A stretch of 64,000 nt of DNA, taken from assembly GCF_001194135.2 (NCBI RefSeq), contig NC_068989.1, forward strand, positions 13,024,446-13,088,445. Reading direction: 5' to 3'. Positions 21,755 to 49,426 of the stretch are shown piece by piece. The notes below the pieces were generated by a model. That model was not told the origin of the DNA, did no database searches, and saw nothing but the letters and a program-made list of their open reading frames with translations. The stretch comes from Octopus bimaculoides (Eukaryota). The position numbers were made by a program, and so were the translations under genes. How positions within the stretch are numbered: position 1 is the first letter of the stretch; each line of letters begins with the position of its first letter.

Positions 21755-22425
21755 CCCCTCAGCGTCACCAGCTTCCGCAGTAGAGACTCAAGCGACAATA
21801 TATACAGAAGCGATGAGAGGGGGAACCCTTGACGAACCGAACGCATGATGTTAAATGGTCTGGATAGATGACCATTTACGCGAACTACCGAGCGGATACT
21901 GCTGTATAAGGCAGCGATCCAACCGCTGAGGATGGGACTGAAACCATTCGCTTTAAGGACAGCCCCAAGGAGTGATGGTCTACCCTATCGAAAGCTTTTG
22001 TTTGATCCATATTGATCAGCGCCTCACCCATGCCAGGATTCTTAACTACTCTGTTTATGATGTAGCACATCAGATAGAGGTTGTCATGGATACTCCTACC
22101 CGGTACGGCGCGCGTTTGCGCCTTGTCCTTGTCGACTAGTTTCTCGATGACAAGCGCCAACCACTCGGCTAACACCTTGGCCAAAATTTTCAAATCTGCG
22201 TTGAGCAGAGTGACGGACCTGAAGTTATCTATGACGTTCCCCTTGTTTGGATCTTTCTTTAGCAGTGCCACCGCTCTTCGCTTTACAAAGACGGGGATAC
22301 TCCCGTTTTGCTGCCATTGTCTGATTATCATATATCGCGCAGTCTTCAAATCATTTGGACGGAAAAAATATGAACTCTTTAGACTAGGTCAGAACAGTAC
22401 TGGAGGAGCGTTTTTCGTCACGGAC
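21755..22425 (-). mobile_element. Tx1/L1-clade LINE reverse transcriptase fragment (decayed)
   Basis: LLKKDPNKGNVIDNFRSVTLLNADLKILAKVLA...PGRSIHDNL...LINMDQTKAFDRVDH, then after a frameshift VRLNGHLSRPFNIMRSVRQGFP: RT domains 1-4 of L1/Tx1 type. Confidence 0.88.
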
Positions 22426-26406: not shown

Positions 26407-26550
26407 CTTTGCCTTTCATCCATTCGGGTTCAATTAAATAGGTACCAGTTACATACTGGAGTCGATTCGATGTAATCGACTTAATCCCTTTGTCTGTCCT
26501 TGTTTGTCCTCTCTATGTTTAGCCCACTGCGGGCAATAAAGAAATAAATA
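26407..26550 (+). mobile_element. SINE family A, 5'-truncated, tail A1
   Basis: CTTTGCCTTTCATCC...GATGTAATCGACTTAATCCCTTTGTCTGTCCTTG...GGGCAATAAAGAAATAAA matches the reverse complement of 5738-5880. Confidence 0.85.
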
Positions 26551-27126: not shown

Positions 27127-27460
27127 TCTTTTATCGATCCCAGGACTTCTTCTTTGTAAGCTTAGTACTTATTCTATCGGTCTCTTTTGCCGAAAGCTAA
27201 GTTACGGGGACGTAAACACACCAGCATCTGTTGTCAAGTGATTCTAGGGGGACAAACACAGACACACAAATACACACACACACAAACACACACACACACA
27301 CACANNNNNNNNNNGTTTCCTTCTACCAAATCCACTCACAAGGCTTTGGTCGGCCTGAGGCTATGTAGAAGACACTTGCCCAAGATGCCATGCAGTGGGA
27401 CTGAACCCGGAACCATGTGGTTGATAAGCAAGCTACTTACCACACAGCCACTCCTGCGCC
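27127..27460 (-). mobile_element. SINE family B with internal (CA)n and gap, 3' deletion
   Basis: Both arms match 34605-34940; head ends ACCACACAGCCACTCCTGCGCC. Confidence 0.92.
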
Positions 27461-41949: not shown

Positions 41950-42890
41950 TGTCATTGGCCTTTGATGACGGAAGGTTTTCGACTTTGGTACTCTCTTTTG
42001 TGTTTGTTGGTTTGGTCTATATTCATTCCTGTAAAAACCTGGACAGAAAGAGGTGAAGTTGTTTCTTGTAAATCCTACTACATGTAGATCTCTCAGTAGT
42101 GGTTTCTTGAAAAATCCTACTTTATGTAGAGCCCTTAAGTGTCTTGGCAAGTTATTAAATAGCTGTGAGCAGTTGAAGCCCAAGCTGTTGTAATTCATGG
42201 TCACTATCATGACGGGGCAGGTGGGAACTTTAGAACTGTGCATTAACATCCAATTCGGCGAATTCGAAGTTCGGTGCCAACCCCTCCACGATCTTTCATA
42301 TATCTATCATTGCATAGCTATCAGGTCTTAGCTCACGGGAGTAGAGTCGTAGCTTCTTCAGTCTCTCACACTGGGGCATATGTTCCATTTGACGCAATCT
42401 TTCTGGCGTAGCACTGCTGAATTGCCTCACGTTACGCTAATAATTTAACATTGTGGCATGACCAGAGTTGAGAGCAGTAATACAGACGGCTGATTACATA
42501 TGTCCTCCATAGTACCAGCATAATTTCCTGGTCTCCTGTTTAGAAAGTCTTCAGAATTCATCCAACCAGTCACCTGCATATTGTCACCATATTTGTACAT
42601 GAAACGAGACGTTGCAGCTCATATTAATCCCCAGATCGAGCACTGTATTTGTCTCAGTGTTTACCGCAACTTTTGATCCAAAGTGTTATTGTTGAAGCAA
42701 TGAACACAATCTAACTAATAGCAGTGGGCTTGGAATTTGCATGTATTAAATCGCATGTTGTTTTCTTCAACCCGTTTATATATGGAAGCTAGGTCTTTCT
42801 GTATAAGATTAACATTGAAAGGTTTCTTGACTGCCTCTACTGTTCTTGTTTCATCGCCATAAAATTTTTGTGTCACGCTATCTGTGAAAT
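41950..42890 (-). mobile_element. CR1-like LINE, decayed RT C-terminal half
   Basis: FYGDETR (degenerate FADD)...LIQKDLASIYKRVEENNMRFNTCKFQ; NSLGFNCSQLFNNLPRHLR; resembles the 49079 fragment. Confidence 0.8.
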
Positions 42891-44084
42891 ATGCAGCAAA
42901 ACCCGAAAGAGTTACCATAAACAAAGCCATCTTTTGTTTTTCTTTTGTCTTTTGTTGCAGTCATTGGTATATGACCTTAATCACGCAAGTGTGCCAATGC
43001 CGTTACCCATGTGTAATGTGTGTTCGCACGCGTGCGTGTATATGAGTATGTGTGCGCACGCGTGTGTCTGTGTTTAGATTTACATACACTATTTCCGTAA
43101 AACTAAATATATTATTCCATTATTCATCGTATCCATAAATACATGAATACTTATATGTATACACACACAGATACACATACACATACACACACACACATAT
43201 ATGTATGTAATTATGTATGTATGACTGTGTATGTATATGTACATATATATNNNNNNNNNNNNNNNNNNNNNNNNNNNNNNNNNNNNNNNNNNNNNNNNNN
43301 NNNNNNNNNNNNNNNNNNNNNNNNNNNNNNNNNNNNNNNNNNNNNNNNNNNNNNNNNNNNNNNNNNNNNNNNNNNNNNNNNNNNNNNNNNNNNNNNNNNN
43401 NNNNNNNNNNNNNNNNNNNNNNNNNNNNNNNNNNNNNNNNNNNNNNNNNNNNNNNNNNNNNNNNNNNNNNNNNNNNNNNNNNNNNNNNNNNNNNNNNNNN
43501 NNNNNNNNNNNNNNNNNNNNNNNNNNNNNNNNNNNNNNNNNNNNNNNNNNNNNNNNNNNNNNNTATATAAATGTATGTATATGTGTGTGTATGTGTGTGT
43601 GTACATACATAAGTATGTATGAATATATTCATCTATATATGTATGTATGTATATAAGAATGTTTCGCGTTTGTTTATCGTTTTGTGAATCACCGCGAAAG
43701 ACACAACCTTACTCCAGCGTGTATTCGACAGTGTGATGTCTTTACAATTAAAATTTATAGGAAGACACATCTCTGCTTGTTACAATAAAACTTCCTCCCA
43801 ATTAATTTGAAGAGGATTCAGTTCAATAGTGTTTAAAATAATCAAATTTTCATATCCACTGGACTATTTAAGAATTTATTCTACAACACACACTTTCATA
43901 TCCACTTCTAATGAGAGTTTGAGAGATTCTTTTATTCGTGTTTCTGTCGAACGCCATGTTACATGTTGTTCTATCGTCATGTATGATAAAATTGAATACA
44001 TTCACTTTAAGTAGACATTTCATGTTTCCATCCTGATGGCAAGATGCAATAAATTAGTATTTTAAAAGTCAATTCATGTTAGCT

Positions 44085-45544: not shown

Positions 45545-46529
45545 NNNNNNNNNNNNNNNNNNNNNNNNNNNNNNNNNNNNNNNNNNNNNNNNNNNNNNNN
45601 NNNNNNNNNNNNNNNNNNNNNNNNNNNNNNNNNNNNNNNNNNNNNNNNNNNNNNNNNNNNNNNNNNNNNNNNNNNNNNNNNNNNNNNNNNNNNNNNNNNN
45701 NNNNNNNNNNNNNNNNNNNNNNNNNNNNNNNNNNNNNNNNNNNNNNNNNNNNNNNNNNNNNNNNNNNNNNNNNNNNNNNNNNNNNNNNNNNNNNNNNNNN
45801 NNNNNNNNNNNNNNNNNNNNNNNNNNNNNNNNNNNNNNNNNNNNNNNNNNNNNNNNNNNNNNNNNNNNNNNNNNNNNNNNNNNNNNNNNNNNNNNNNNNN
45901 NNNNNNNNNNNNNNNNNNNNNNNNNNNNNNNNNNNNNNNNNNNNNNNNNNNNNNNNNNNNNNNNNNNNNNNNNNNNNNNNNNNNNNNNNNNNNNNNNNNN
46001 NNNNNNNNNNNNNNNNNNNNNNNNNNNNNNNNNNNNNNNNNNNNNNNNNNNNNNNNNNNNNNNNNNNNNNNNNNNNNNNNNNNNNNNNNNNNNNNNNNNN
46101 NNNNNNNNNNNNNNNNNNNNNNNNNNNNNNNNNNNNNNNNNNNNNNNNNNNNNNNNNNNNNNNNNNNNNNNNNNNNNNNNNNNNNNNNNNNNNNNNNNNN
46201 NNNNNNNNNNNNNNNNNNNNNNNNNNNNNNNNNNNNNNNNNNNNNNNNNNNNNNNNNNNNNNNNNNNNNNNNNNNNNNNNNNNNNNNNNNNNNNNNNNNN
46301 NNNNNNNNNNNNNNNNNNNNNNNNNNNNNNNNNNNNNNNNNNNNNNNNNNNNNNNNNNNNNNNNNNNNNNNNNNNNNNNNNNNNNNNNNNNNNNNNNNNN
46401 NNNNNNNNNNNNNNNNNNNNNNNNNNNNNNNNNNNNNNNNNNNNNNNNNNNNNNNNNNNNNNNNNNNNNNNNNNNNNNNNNNNNNNNNNNNNNNNNNNNN
46501 NNATATATATATATATATATATATATAGG

Positions 46530-46690
46530 GAGAATTCGCGAAAAAACAACAGACGAAGACAGGTGGTGTAGACAACAAAAGGATGTATTAGTATAATGCT
46601 CGGGAATAGAGAAAGTCCTTAATGTTTCGAGCCTACGCTCTTCAACAGAAAGGAACACTGAAAAAAAAAACAAGGATAGAAACAAGGAGA
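46530..46690 (-). mobile_element. Probable Penelope-like terminal (pseudo-LTR) fragment with a degenerate minimal hammerhead motif
   Basis: Minus strand 46653-46617 reads CCTTT-CTGTTGA-A-GAGC-GTAG-GCTC-GAAAC-ATT-AAGG; PLE assignment is from recalled similarity and the motif. Confidence 0.5.
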
Positions 46691-48149
46691 GAGTGTTTAT
46701 GTGAATGTGTGTGTATATGTGTTTCTTCTATTTTTTTAATTATTATAAATCTTCCACTGAAGAAGAAGCCTGTCTCCAACAAAAATACTAGGCTCCATCT
46801 TTGGGATGTAATAAATACAAACAAATTGTATGTATGTATGTATGTATGTATGTATGTATGCATGCATACATGTGTGTATGTACATACGTTTTTATATATA
46901 TACAACAGATGTATATGTCAATTCCCTGCAGATATTTCCAACGATGTTTTAATTGATTGATGGTGATATTACATCGTTTAAGTGCCTTGTTATACATGTT
47001 ATACAAAATCCGCAAATCTTGATAAATACGGCTTTCCAATGTTTCCTGGTCAAAATAATAATTTATTTTCCCTTTTTTCAACCTAAGGACAAGACCATTG
47101 GTCAGTTGTCTTTTGAGCAGATAAATCTTAAAACAAGATGTCTGATGTCTAACGTACGATTTGTTCTTATTGAATATGTTTAGACGTATTCTAACTTTGA
47201 AAATATCACTATCTAACGGGTATAAAGTAAAGATGTAAGTATTTAGAAATCTAGGGTGAGGCGTATGAGAAAAATGGTTTCTCGTAACTGGAATACAGTA
47301 TGAGTTGTTACGCATTAAATTCTGCAGTGTTGTTGGCAAGTTCAGTCCTCCAACAGATAAAGTTGTCGATACAGAGCAGCTTCTTGTGTAAAGGACATTA
47401 AAGCTTTATGTATGTATGACAGAGTGACTGCTTGCGAGAATGGAAGGTGACGATTTAAACGAATCGAATGTCATAGGATGCTAGACAATAAGAAATAATG
47501 AAAAATATATGTGAATGAATTGCAACAAAACAGAAAAGGAAGAGGCAAATATGCAAATAAAGTTAAATTATGTATGTTACTTATGTTATTAAGTTTACTC
47601 AAGGCACAGTTAGCAGACACCTTGCTTTGGATAAATTCACATTAAAGGAGAAAATTTGTAATGAATAATACAAGTAATAACTAAAAATGATAGAAATAAG
47701 TATATAGGTGGAAGGGTGCATAAGTGGATGTGTGTTAAAGCGTCTATGAGTTTCAACACGTTTCAACACGTTTCTAATGACGTACACTCGCAACCATTAT
47801 GCGAAACGAATCTTTGTTCTCTTTCCCCAGGCAGATGCCTAAATATTCCATCATGTTTATTAAATATATTTTTGTAGTATTGAAAGTACATTTCTTTGCA
47901 TTCTGTTGATATTTTCCACCAATTGATGTTTTCACTTTTAACGTTGCCAAAAGGCTAAAAGATAAATTGCTTTTACTTTTTTTCGGTACGGCTATTTTAT
48001 TAACTCTAGTTCTTGACTATTTTCTTATTTTTACAGATATATGACGGATGAACGCTAACATCTCTCACACTAAAATTTGAACTCGGAAGGTAAACTTTTC
48101 TTAATAATTTTTTTATCTACGCAACCATTTTGGAAGTATTATCACAATC

Positions 48150-48470
48150 GGTCGGCGGATATACTCAGACAAAATGGTACTACTTGGATCGGTAGAAAAT
48201 GATCTCCAGCATAAAGGGAGCAGGTACACTGTGGAGTGCTACAAGGTAGGGATGAGAATTATAATTGCGAAGACTCAGATATTATCTCAATAAAATATCC
48301 AGTGCATTCTTCATATTAGTGGAACATCGCTGGGACAACAGGGAATATTTATGTACATCGAGGATGTATATACGAGTTGTTGATAGCAATAACCTCACTT
48401 AGATGATAGAACTACGGTGCTATAACAGTAATGCAGCAGTTCCAACATTCCATCCTCAAAAGAGGATAGG
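48150..48470 (+). mobile_element. RTE/Expander-like RT fragment (domains 5-7)
   Basis: YSDKMVLLGSVENDLQH...VECYKVGMRIIIAKTQIL...CILHISGTSL resembles FADDxVLLASSxxDLQHxLxxFAAECxxxGMRIxxxK. Confidence 0.6.
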
Positions 48471-49078
48471 TTGGTAAAAAATCAGGCCCTGTATGAATGT
48501 ATGTATGTATGTATATACATACACAAATATATCTTTATATATATACATACATATGTATATATATATACATATGTATATATATNNNNNNNNNNNNNNNNNN
48601 NNNNNNNNNNNNNNNNNNNNNNNNNNNNNNNNNNNNNNNNNNNNNNNNNNNNNNNNNNNNNNNNNNNNNNNNNNNNNNNNNNNNNNNNNNNNNNNNNNNN
48701 NNNNNNNNNNNNNNNNNNNNNNNNNNNNNNNNNNNNNNNNNNNNNNNNNNNNNNNNNNNNNNNNNNNNNNNNNNNNNNNNNNNNNNNNNNNNNNNNNNNN
48801 NNNNNNNNNNNNNNNNNNNNNNNNNNNNNNNNNNNNNNNNNNNNNNNNNNNNNNNNNNNNNNNNNNNNNNNNNNNNNNNNNNNNNNNNNNNNNNNNNNNN
48901 NNNNNNNNNNNNNNNNNNNNNNNNNNNNNNNNNNNNNNNNNNNNNNNNNNNNNNNNNNNNNNNNNNNNNNNNNNNNNNNNNNNNNNNNNNNNNNNNNNNN
49001 NNNNNNNNNNNNNNNNNNNNNNNNNNNNNNNNNNNNNNNNNNNNNNNNNNNNNNNNNNNNNNNNNNNNNNNNNNNNNC

Positions 49079-49426
49079 TGCATCTCACATAAGAACAAGA
49101 TACTGCAGCAGCCTCGGTTTCAGAGGACCTCAGCTCTTCAATGCCCTGCCAAAACATTTGAGAGACCTGCAAGACACGGATATGGAGGTCTTCAAGACAA
49201 AACTCGACGCTTTCCTCTCCACGATACCAGACGAACCAATGGCAGCGATGTCAAATTCTCTTATACACCAGATGTGCCATCAAAACTCTTGATTGGACTA
49301 TATCAGGTGCAGGAGAAGAGCCATGCAAGGAACGTGAAGAGAGCAAAACATAAAGACAGAAAATCACGGTGGTGCTCCAGCATGACCACAGCCACTTGGC
49401 TGAACCCCATAAATAAATAAATAAAT
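49079..49426 (+). mobile_element. CR1-like LINE 3' end (ORF2 C-terminus, 3' UTR, double hairpin, (TAAA)n tail)
   Basis: CSSLGFRGPQLFNALPKHLRDLQDTDMEVFKTKLDAFLSTIPDEP, stop at 49292, GGTGGTGCTCCAGCATGACCACAGCCACTTGGCTGAA at 49368-49404, then ATAAATAAATAAATAAA. Confidence 0.88.

What the first reader, a model, noticed from the sequence alone, without database searches (positions are those of the whole stretch)
49368..49404. CR1-like LINE and SINE family B share a 3' double hairpin with compensatory substitutions
Seen: the LINE 3' UTR ends GGTGGTGCTCCAGCATGACCACAGCCACTTGGCTGAA and the SINE B tail (34947-34983) is GGCGGTGCTCCAGCATGGCCACAGTCAAATGACTGAA, 31/37 identical. Four of the six differences are two compensatory pairs (T3-A18 vs C3-G18 in hairpin 1; C25-G32 vs T25-A32 in hairpin 2) and the other two lie in the hairpin 2 loop. 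The B copy at 37818 keeps the CAGTC/GACTG stem with a different loop. Established: stringent LINEs such as eel UnaL2 recognise a 3' stem-loop that partner SINEs borrow. Inference: this identifies the autonomous partner of an abundant octopus SINE and the RNA structure its RT binds.
Basis: partly seen in the sequence, partly recalled or inferred. Interest (0 to 1): 0.72.

Follow-up and report, generated by a model that had tools for sequence, protein, structure and literature searches.

The report
Octopus LINE and SINE share 3' hairpins
A CR1-like jumping gene (LINE) and an abundant short octopus repeat (SINE) end in the same 37-base RNA double hairpin, which is the usual sign that the short element is copied by the long element's enzyme; this is a good new example of a well-known mechanism, not a new one.

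Summary
Window 49368-49404 and 34947-34983 match at 31/37 bases. The six differences are two stem-preserving pairs plus two loop bases.

The motif belongs to the LINE and is not a chance SINE insertion. Nine LINE 3' ends of the same lineage carry it at the same place: after the ORF2 stop, a 1-128 nt non-alignable spacer, then the motif and short A-rich tandem repeats. These are the window copy, two Octopus vulgaris chromosome copies and six octopod-like assembly contigs, three of them with intact 984-1041 aa APE+RT ORF2. The motif is 82% conserved among families whose last 180 coding bases are only 56% identical.

A more distant LINE (L132) keeps hairpin 1 with a further compensatory change (U-A to C-G) and has a different second hairpin. 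CR1-like relatives at about 40% identity, and a second CR1-like LINE in the window, have other tails.

RNAalifold predicts the proposed fold on its own, and 94% of stem cells pair, against 23-42% in shifted registers. Covariation is real but modest, about 3-4 independent events.

All nine SINE B tails carry their own hairpin-2 variant (U-A), which none of the sampled LINEs has. The partner is therefore identified at lineage level only. RT binding is inferred by analogy.

This is a new member of a known kind.

The parts
48583..49077 (.). Assembly gap (N run) that hides the rest of the LINE
   Evidence: tblastn with the full-length relatives finds only their last ~72 aa in the window, downstream of the gap.
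49080..49292 (+). C-terminal 70 codons plus stop (TGA, 49290-49292) of the ORF2 of a CR1-like LINE (...SLGFRGPQLFNALPKHLRDL...FKTKLDAFLSTIPDEP...)
   Evidence: Translation. It is 57-65% identical to the C-termini of the full-length APE+RT proteins P0001, P0151 and P0152.
49293..49367 (+). Non-conserved 3' UTR spacer (75 nt)
   Evidence: the spacer is 1-128 nt long in related LINEs and does not align between them.
49368..49387 (+). Hairpin 1. Pairs are G1-C20, G2-C19, U3-A18, G5.U16, U6-A15, G7-C14 and C8-G13, with a G4.G17 mismatch and loop UCCA.
   Evidence: Mean pairwise identity among LINE families is 88%.
49389..49402 (+). Hairpin 2: stem CAGCC/GGCUG with loop ACUU
   Evidence: The stem is kept or covaries, and the loop varies freely in sequence and length (3-6 nt).
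49403..49425 (+). 3' terminal tail: AA CCCCA (TAAA)4, a short-unit tandem repeat instead of poly(A)
   Evidence: Related LINEs end in (TTAAA)n, (TTAAAACA)2, (TAAAAGAA)2 and similar units.
34607..34996 (+). Full-length SINE B copy. It consists of a tRNA-like/CORE-like head (34607-34770), an internal (TA/TG)n stretch (34771-34799), the body (34800-34946), the double hairpin (34947-34983) and the tail AACAAG(TAAAAGAG)...
   Evidence: Covariance-model hit of 77 bits.
35173..35222 (-). SINE B tail (5'-truncated or gap-cut copy) with the double hairpin
   Evidence: (66.6 bits).
37816..37865 (-). SINE B tail of the full-length copy 38261-37816(-). Hairpin 2 reads CAGUC UGGU GACUG.
   Evidence: (61 bits).
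7187..7236 (+). SINE B tail of an old, decayed copy (6858-7236). Its hairpins are partly broken.
   Evidence: (57.7 bits).

Best explanation
The 37-nt motif is the conserved 3'-terminal RNA module of one lineage of CR1-like, stringent-type non-LTR retrotransposons in octopods. The module is two adjacent hairpins followed by AAC and short A-rich tandem repeats. The abundant tRNA-headed SINE B carries a copy of the same module as its own 3' end.

The most likely mechanism is as follows. The LINE's ORF2 protein (endonuclease plus reverse transcriptase) recognises the double hairpin on its own transcript. It then starts target-primed reverse transcription within the terminal repeats. Pol III transcripts of SINE B present the same module and are copied in trans.

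Shown here:
- The module is shared.
- It sits at the extreme 3' end of many LINE families.
- It is conserved more strongly than the coding sequence.
- It has an energetically favoured fold with stem-preserving substitutions.

Inferred:
- Binding by ORF2p.
- Trans-mobilisation of SINE B.
- Which family is the actual master.
- A division of labour in which the near-invariant hairpin 1 is the main protein-contact element and hairpin 2 is a structural or specificity element.
For: (1) The motif is intrinsic to the LINE.
- L001, L002 and L003 encode intact ORF2 of 984-1041 aa with APE+RT domains and are 64-72% identical to each other. They carry the motif 7-21 nt after the stop codon.
- The Octopus vulgaris chromosome copies L126 and L127 carry it.
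- The contigs L128, L129 and L130 carry it.

(2) Selection acts on the motif. Mean pairwise identity is 81.9% for the motif (87.6% for hairpin 1), against 55.6% for the last 180 nt of the ORF. The spacer before the motif does not align.

(3) The structure is supported.
- Every LINE tail folds to the same double hairpin as its MFE structure.
- RNAalifold predicts the same fold on its own.
- 94.1% of cells are paired, against 23-42% in shifted registers. Five pairs show changes on both sides. The covariation score is 0.251 against 0.151 in shuffles (0/500).
- U-G intermediates link C-G and U-A at pairs 3-18 and 25-33.

(4) L132, a more distant LINE, keeps the shape of hairpin 1, including the G.G mismatch and the G.U pair. 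Its pair 6-15 has switched from U-A to C-G. Its second hairpin is different and 7 bp long.

(5) The motif is specific to this lineage. CR1-like relatives at about 40% identity (L124, L125) and the second CR1-like LINE in the window (42924-41950, minus strand) have other tails.

(6) All 9 SINE-type covariance-model hits lie at the end of SINE B bodies. The L126 LINE has the same AACAAGTAAAAG tail as SINE B.

(7) There is precedent: UnaL2 (PMC1636434), ZfL2 (PMC4176376), the amniote CR1 hairpin plus octamer repeat (PMC4316615), and oyster SINE-CR1 tails (PMC4758252).
Against: - No experiment was done, so binding and trans-mobilisation are inferred.
- Only about 19 tails were examined and many are related, so there are few independent compensatory events (about 3-4).
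- Hairpin 1 is almost invariant, so most of its pairs give no evidence for or against the structure.
- L001 and L002 have a C.C mismatch at pair 26-32, leaving a 4-bp stem.
- None of the sampled LINEs has the SINE's own hairpin-2 version (U25-A32).
- The source organisms of L001-L003 and L128-L130 are not stated. For L001 and L128 an octopod origin is inferred from a flanking repeat shared with the window and with O. vulgaris. For the other four it rests only on similarity to the octopus LINE copies.
- Placement in the CR1 clade was not tested by phylogeny.
Confidence: 0.78

Rival explanations
1. Coincidence: a severely 5'-truncated SINE B copy inserted directly behind an unrelated LINE 3' end in this window.
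For: SINE B copies differ from each other by 10-30%. The 84% identity of the 49368 motif to a SINE B tail therefore does not by itself separate it from a SINE B fragment.
Against: Nine independent LINE 3' ends from at least two sources carry the motif at the same position relative to the ORF. LINE tails share C25-G32 in hairpin 2, whereas all SINE copies have U25 and eight of the nine have A32. The alignment of L128 with the window LINE runs through the junction.
Confidence: 0.02
2. The tail is shared by descent, but the hairpins are not what is recognised. Either SINE B is mobilised mainly through the A-rich terminal repeats, or it is mobilised by another octopus LINE (for example RTE or Dong-R4). 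On this view the conservation of the motif reflects another role, such as RNA stability or 3'-end processing.
For: - The SINE's hairpin-2 variant matches none of the sampled LINEs.
- One SINE B copy (27453-27133, minus strand) lacks both hairpins but keeps AAAAGAGTA.
- RTE and Dong-R4 are more abundant than CR1 in O. vulgaris, and an RTE is the LINE reported as transcribed in the brain (PMC13282606, PMC9115989).
Against: - The shared module starts exactly at the first base of hairpin 1 and includes both hairpins.
- The stems are preserved by compensatory changes in LINE masters and in the SINE.
- In every stringent LINE tested so far, the 3' stem-loop is the ORF2p recognition element (PMC1636434, PMC4176376).
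Confidence: 0.13
3. Reverse direction: the module arose in the SINE or elsewhere and was captured by the LINE by template switching.
For: Sequence identity alone does not show the direction of transfer.
Against: The module is present in many LINE families whose coding ends are only about 56% identical, and in modified form in the more distant L132 lineage. It is therefore old in the LINE lineage. SINE B copies are comparatively uniform and all share one derived hairpin-2 state.
Confidence: 0.05

Closest known systems
Eel UnaL2 LINE / UnaSINE1 (L2 clade, stringent type); zebrafish ZfL2-1/ZfL2-2
   Same: [quoted passage not shown] The stem-loop is required for retrotransposition and is bound by the ORF2 region between the endonuclease and RT domains. 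Recognition can be bipartite, with the stem read generally and the loop read specifically (PMC1636434, PMC4176376).
   Different: Here there are two adjacent hairpins rather than one stem with an internal loop. The sequences are unrelated. Hairpin 1 is nearly invariant, including a G.G mismatch and a G.U pair, while the loop of hairpin 2 varies freely. Nothing has been tested experimentally.
Amniote CR1 3' UTR (hairpin plus octamer microsatellite) and CR1-mobilised SINEs
   Same: There is a short 3' UTR whose hairpin and short-unit terminal repeat are conserved across subfamilies and are proposed as the RT recognition site (PMC4316615). The terminal units here are 4-9 nt, often 8 nt (TAAAAGAA, TTAAAACA).
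   Different: The hairpin sequence and the repeat unit are different. This is an invertebrate lineage, and CR1-clade membership was not tested phylogenetically.
Oyster Vhc_1 SINEs with CR1-1_CGi / CR1-14_CGi tails
   Same: A mollusc tRNA-derived SINE has a 3' tail homologous to the 3' ends of CR1-clade LINEs, and these LINEs are proposed as its partners (PMC4758252).
   Different: That case is in a bivalve rather than a cephalopod, with a different SINE superfamily and a different tail. No structure or covariation analysis was reported in the passages read.
Octopus OR1/OR2/OK SINEs (Ohshima and Okada 1994), CORE-SINE superfamily
   Same: SINE B has a tRNA-like head followed by CCTTGGGCAAGT. 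From memory this resembles the start of the CORE domain. The literature lists octopus OR1 or OR2 as CORE-SINEs (PMC4824008, PMC4758252).
   Different: I could not obtain the OR/OK sequences, so identity with SINE B is untested. I found no statement about their LINE partner in the papers available to me.

Membership tests
Stringent-type LINE/SINE pair with a common 3' tail | The SINE 3' end is homologous to the extreme 3' end of the LINE | tested here: met
   The two 37-mers match at 31/37 bases, and one covariance model finds both classes at 51-77 bits. The homology starts exactly at base 1 of hairpin 1.
Stringent-type LINE/SINE pair with a common 3' tail | The tail is an intrinsic, conserved feature of the LINE family or lineage | tested here: met
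   It is present in 9 of the 10 related LINE 3' ends. The motif is 82% identical, against 56% for the ORF end.
Stringent-type LINE/SINE pair with a common 3' tail | The tail forms a stem-loop supported by compensatory changes | tested here: met
   The support is modest, at about 3-4 independent events, and the sample is small and related.
Stringent-type LINE/SINE pair with a common 3' tail | The element ends in short tandem repeats rather than poly(A) | tested here: met
   The tails are (TAAA)4, (TTAAA)n, (TTAAAACA)2 and (TAAAAGAA)2 in the LINEs and (TAAAAGAG)-like units in the SINE.
Stringent-type LINE/SINE pair with a common 3' tail | ORF2p binds the tail and mobilises the SINE in trans | not testable with these tools
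   This needs binding and retrotransposition assays.
CR1 clade of non-LTR retrotransposons | ORF2 has an N-terminal apurinic-type endonuclease and an RT, with no RNase H | tested here: met
   P0001, P0151 and P0152 carry PF03372/PF14529 and PF00078 only.
CR1 clade of non-LTR retrotransposons | The RT domain groups with CR1 in a phylogeny, as opposed to L2, Rex1, Jockey and others | not tested
   No reference LINE set was available. The C-terminal motif (RLxxLxLYSLExRRxRY..IY.WKIL) resembles CR1/L2-group elements from memory only.
CR1 clade of non-LTR retrotransposons | The 3' UTR has a hairpin and a roughly 8-nt microsatellite | tested here: inconclusive
   Hairpins are present. The repeat units are 4-9 nt with 1-5 copies, and only some are octamers.
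tRNA-derived CORE-SINE (octopus OR-type) | tRNA-related head with pol III A and B boxes | tested here: inconclusive
   TGGCTATGTGG and GGTTCAGTCCC are seen by eye. ARAGORN and Rfam do not call a tRNA.
tRNA-derived CORE-SINE (octopus OR-type) | CORE central domain | not tested
   Only a 12-mer resemblance recalled from memory; no CORE reference was available.

The most novel reading that the evidence does not exclude
The double hairpin may be a bipartite address label. On this reading hairpin 1, with its fixed G.G mismatch, G.U pair and NCCA loop, is a lineage-wide handle read by a conserved part of ORF2p. It is kept even in the distant L132 lineage. Hairpin 2 would be the rapidly evolving, family-specific discriminator. 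SINE B carries a private hairpin-2 variant (U-A, loop WAAU) matched by no sampled LINE. It could therefore either track a not-yet-sampled master family or escape family specificity and parasitise many CR1-like families at once. The second option would help explain why SINEs make up about 12% of octopus genomes.
Probability: 0.25. Interest if true: 0.55.

Novelty: new member of a known kind. Interest (0 to 1): 0.4.

Why it matters
SINEs make up about 11.7% of the Octopus vulgaris genome and almost all are 'unclassified' in the latest annotation (PMC13282606). Their mobilising LINE is not stated in any paper I could search.

Tying the abundant SINE B to a CR1-like lineage with intact ORF2 copies and a defined 37-nt RNA module has three uses:
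- It gives annotators a classifier, namely the tail covariance model.
- It gives a concrete hypothesis for the SINE and LINE expansions in octopods.
- It provides a compact, mutable RNA element for retrotransposition and binding assays.

It does not change the general picture of LINE-SINE partnership.

Tried and rejected
- A word-index protein search with the 70-aa LINE fragment found nothing. The HMMER representative search was needed instead.
No extra SINE copies came from these collections.
- CR1-like relatives at about 40% identity (L124, L125) have different tails and so did not help with covariation.
- L131 (P0260) breaks off just after the PDEP motif of the ORF, before the normal ORF end, and runs into GC-rich unrelated sequence. 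It has no motif and is uninformative.
- 29508-29537(-) resembles the tail (GACTGAAGAAGTAAAAGAG), but no element context was found and I judged it chance.
- The sequence upstream of the N gap (46503-48582) does not match this LINE at E <= 1e-3.
- Rfam has no family for the motif.
- A literal sequence search of papers found nothing relevant.
- No supplements are held for the SINEBase and MetaSINE papers.
- The Albertin 2015 and Ohshima 1996 papers are not held.

Full report
**1. The observation**

- Window 49368-49404 reads GGTGGTGCTCCAGCATGACCACAGCCACTTGGCTGAA and 34947-34983 reads GGCGGTGCTCCAGCATGGCCACAGTCAAATGACTGAA. They match at 31/37 bases, with differences at motif positions 3, 18, 25, 28, 29 and 32, as reported.
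- The first motif lies 75 nt after the stop codon of a reading frame ending ...SLGFRGPQLFNALPKHLRDLQDTDMEVFKTKLDAFLSTIPDEP...NS*. It is followed by CCCCA(TAAA)4.
- An N gap (48583-49077) hides the rest of the element. tblastn with full-length relatives finds only their last ~72 residues here.
- The second motif ends a ~390-bp SINE (34607-34996). This SINE has a tRNA-like head, an internal TA/TG microsatellite, a ~150-nt body and the tail.
- BLAST finds LINE-SINE similarity only in the 37 nt.
- A 21-nt core has 4 matches in the window and 0 in 100 shuffles.
- Both 37-mers fold into the proposed double hairpin. The MFE values are -18.1 and -17.9 kcal/mol and the fold makes up ~97% of the ensemble. 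Old, decayed SINE copies fold worse, as expected for dead copies.

**2.

- The word-index protein search failed.
- An exhaustive HMMER search found P0001, a 984-aa APE+RT protein that is 65% identical over the fragment.
- P0001 and its closest relatives P0151 and P0152 (64-72% identical, intact ORF2 of 984-1041 aa) sit on assembly contigs L001-L003.
- All three contigs carry the motif 7-21 nt after the stop, followed by short A-rich tandem repeats.
- A profile of C-terminal fragments (A1) retrieved two proteins annotated in the Octopus vulgaris chromosome assembly GCA_951406725.2. Their loci, L126 and L127, show the same arrangement.
- So do three more contigs, L128-L130.
- L131 breaks off just after the PDEP motif of the ORF, before the normal ORF end, and runs into unrelated sequence, so it is uninformative.
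- In total, nine LINE 3' ends including the window's carry the module.
- L001 and L128 are flanked by a repeat (TTTCTTTACTACCCACAAGGGGCTA...) that also occurs in the window (26546-26440, minus strand) and on the O. vulgaris chromosome. These anonymous contigs are therefore octopod DNA.

**3. Conservation pattern**

- Among eight LINE families, the last 180 coding nucleotides are on average 55.6% identical.
- The spacer between stop and motif is 1-128 nt and does not align.
- The 38-nt motif is 81.9% identical, and hairpin 1 is 87.6% identical.
- The module is therefore under stronger constraint than the protein-coding end.
- It lies in variable frame and at variable distance from the ORF, so it is not coding.

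**4. Structure**

- On 17 tails (9 LINE, 8 SINE; alignment A2), RNAalifold predicts (((.((((....)))).))).(((((.....))))) on its own.
- Counting pairs on that structure gives 94.1% of cells paired, against 23-42% in registers shifted by 1-3 columns.
- Five pairs have changes on both sides. The covariation score is 0.251 against 0.151 +/- 0.016 in shuffles (0/500).
- The informative pairs are:
  - 3-18: C-G 11, U-G 3, U-A 3.
  - 25-33 in alignment columns, which is motif pair 25-32: C-G 8, U-A 7, U-G 1.
  - 26-32: C-G 11, U-G 2, U-A 1, with C.C in L001 and L002.
- The hairpin-2 loop varies freely in sequence and length (ACUU, GCAU, CUAG, UUCG, CAUG, AUAU, AACUC, ACU, AAAU, UAAU, UGGU).
- Hairpin 1 is nearly invariant, including a G4.G17 mismatch and a G5.U16 pair. 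Only its first loop base varies (U, C or A).
- Each LINE tail folds to the double hairpin as its MFE structure.
- Caveat: the SINE copies inherit one U-A change from their master, and the LINE families are related. I therefore count about 3-4 independent compensatory events. The shuffle control does not correct for relatedness.

**5. An independent test from a more distant lineage**

- L132 has a C-terminus of the P0003/P0025 type.
- One nucleotide after its stop it has GGUGGCGCAUCAGCGUGGCC.
- This is hairpin 1 with the same shape, the same G.G mismatch and the same G.U pair. Pair 6-15, which is invariant U-A in the other 14 hairpin-1 sequences counted, has changed to C-G.
- It is followed by a different, 7-bp second hairpin.

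**6. Specificity**

- CR1-like relatives at ~40% protein identity have other tails. L125 ends in (TTACCAAAG)n. L124 has another hairpin plus (ACAAATAT)n.
- The second, related CR1-like LINE in the window (42924-41950, minus strand) also lacks the motif.
- A covariance model built from A2 finds 18 hits of at least 50.9 bits in 146 kb. The next best hit scores 11 bits.
- Nine of the hits are LINE ends. The other nine all lie at the 3' end of SINE B bodies.

**7. The SINE-LINE relationship**

- The shared module begins exactly at base 1 of hairpin 1. Upstream sequences are unrelated.
- All nine SINE B tails have U at motif position 25, and eight of the nine have A at position 32. Most LINEs have C-G there. 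The O. vulgaris LINE in L126 has the U.G intermediate and also the SINE-like tail AACAAGUAAAAG.
- None of the sampled LINEs has the SINE's exact hairpin 2. What is identified is therefore the partner lineage, not the master family.

**8. Mechanism (inferred)**

- By analogy with stringent LINEs, ORF2p would bind the 3' hairpins and start target-primed reverse transcription in the terminal repeats. SINE B RNA would be copied in trans.
- Precedents:
  - In UnaL2, the 3' hairpin is needed for retrotransposition and is shared with its SINE (PMC1636434).
  - In amniote CR1, the hairpin and octamer repeat are conserved and proposed as the RT recognition site (PMC4316615).
  - In oyster, SINE tails match CR1 3' ends (PMC4758252).

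**9. Novelty**

- The principle is textbook, and CR1-SINE pairs are known in molluscs.
- I found no paper describing this octopus pair or this motif. Rfam has nothing.
- The 2026 O. vulgaris repeat annotation lists SINEs at 11.7% of the genome, nearly all unclassified. It also lists 169 CR1 families, 13 of them recently active, and gives no partner analysis (PMC13282606).
- Repbase could not be consulted.
- Verdict: a well-supported new member of a known kind.

Noticed in passing
window 27133-27453 (-): This SINE B copy has the head, microsatellite and body, but the sequence jumps from ...GGGATCGAT straight to AAAAGAGTATA. Both hairpins (about 56 nt) are missing while the terminal repeat is kept. 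It could be a later deletion or a tail-less variant.
   Followed up: partly
window 41950-42924 (-): A second, decayed CR1-like LINE 3' part, 34-61% identical at protein level to P0001, with frameshifts. Its 3' UTR does not contain the double hairpin, so related LINE lineages with different tails coexist in this genome.
   Followed up: partly
window 26440-26546 (-); L001 3238-3285; L128 677-707; L126 17386-17406: Another interspersed repeat (TTTCTTTACTACCCACAAGGGGCTA.ACATAGAGGGGACAAACAAGGACAGACAAAGGG...) is shared by the window, the O. vulgaris chromosome and two anonymous 'metagenome' contigs. I used it only to argue that those contigs are octopod DNA. Its family is unknown.
   Followed up: partly
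L132 842-891 (Logan SRR30067250): A more distant LINE lineage keeps hairpin 1 in shape, with a compensatory U-A to C-G change. Its second hairpin is different (7 bp) and it ends in (TG)n. This suggests the hairpin-1 handle is older than the octopus LINE lineage studied here. The source organism is unknown.
   Followed up: partly
P0261: A 94-aa protein labelled 'hypothetical protein, partial [Escherichia coli]' in NCBI/UniRef is 78% identical to part of this octopus LINE C-terminus. It is probably contamination of a bacterial assembly with cephalopod DNA.
   Followed up: no
L126 7341-7754 and flanks: A young SINE B copy in O. vulgaris, 89-91% identical to the window copy, is flanked by AATGTA on both sides (a possible 6-bp target-site duplication). 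It sits inside an inverted-repeat element, since its flanks are reverse complements of each other.
   Followed up: no
L127 15348-15690 (+) and 15987-16353 (-): Two SINE B copies lie tail to tail about 300 bp apart and form a large inverted repeat.
   Followed up: no
window 21885-22349 (-), 38906-39235 (-), 48170-48300 (+): Fragments of other non-LTR retrotransposons: an RT-domain ORF, a C-terminal zinc-knuckle region cut by an N gap, and a post-YADD RT piece. None matches the motif-bearing LINE lineage at E <= 1e-3.
   Followed up: no
window, whole: There are 22 N runs totalling 8049 bases, most of them bordered by TA/TG microsatellites. Several cut SINE B copies at their internal microsatellite (for example 53571 and 44912). 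In this assembly SINE B therefore appears to break contigs.
   Followed up: no
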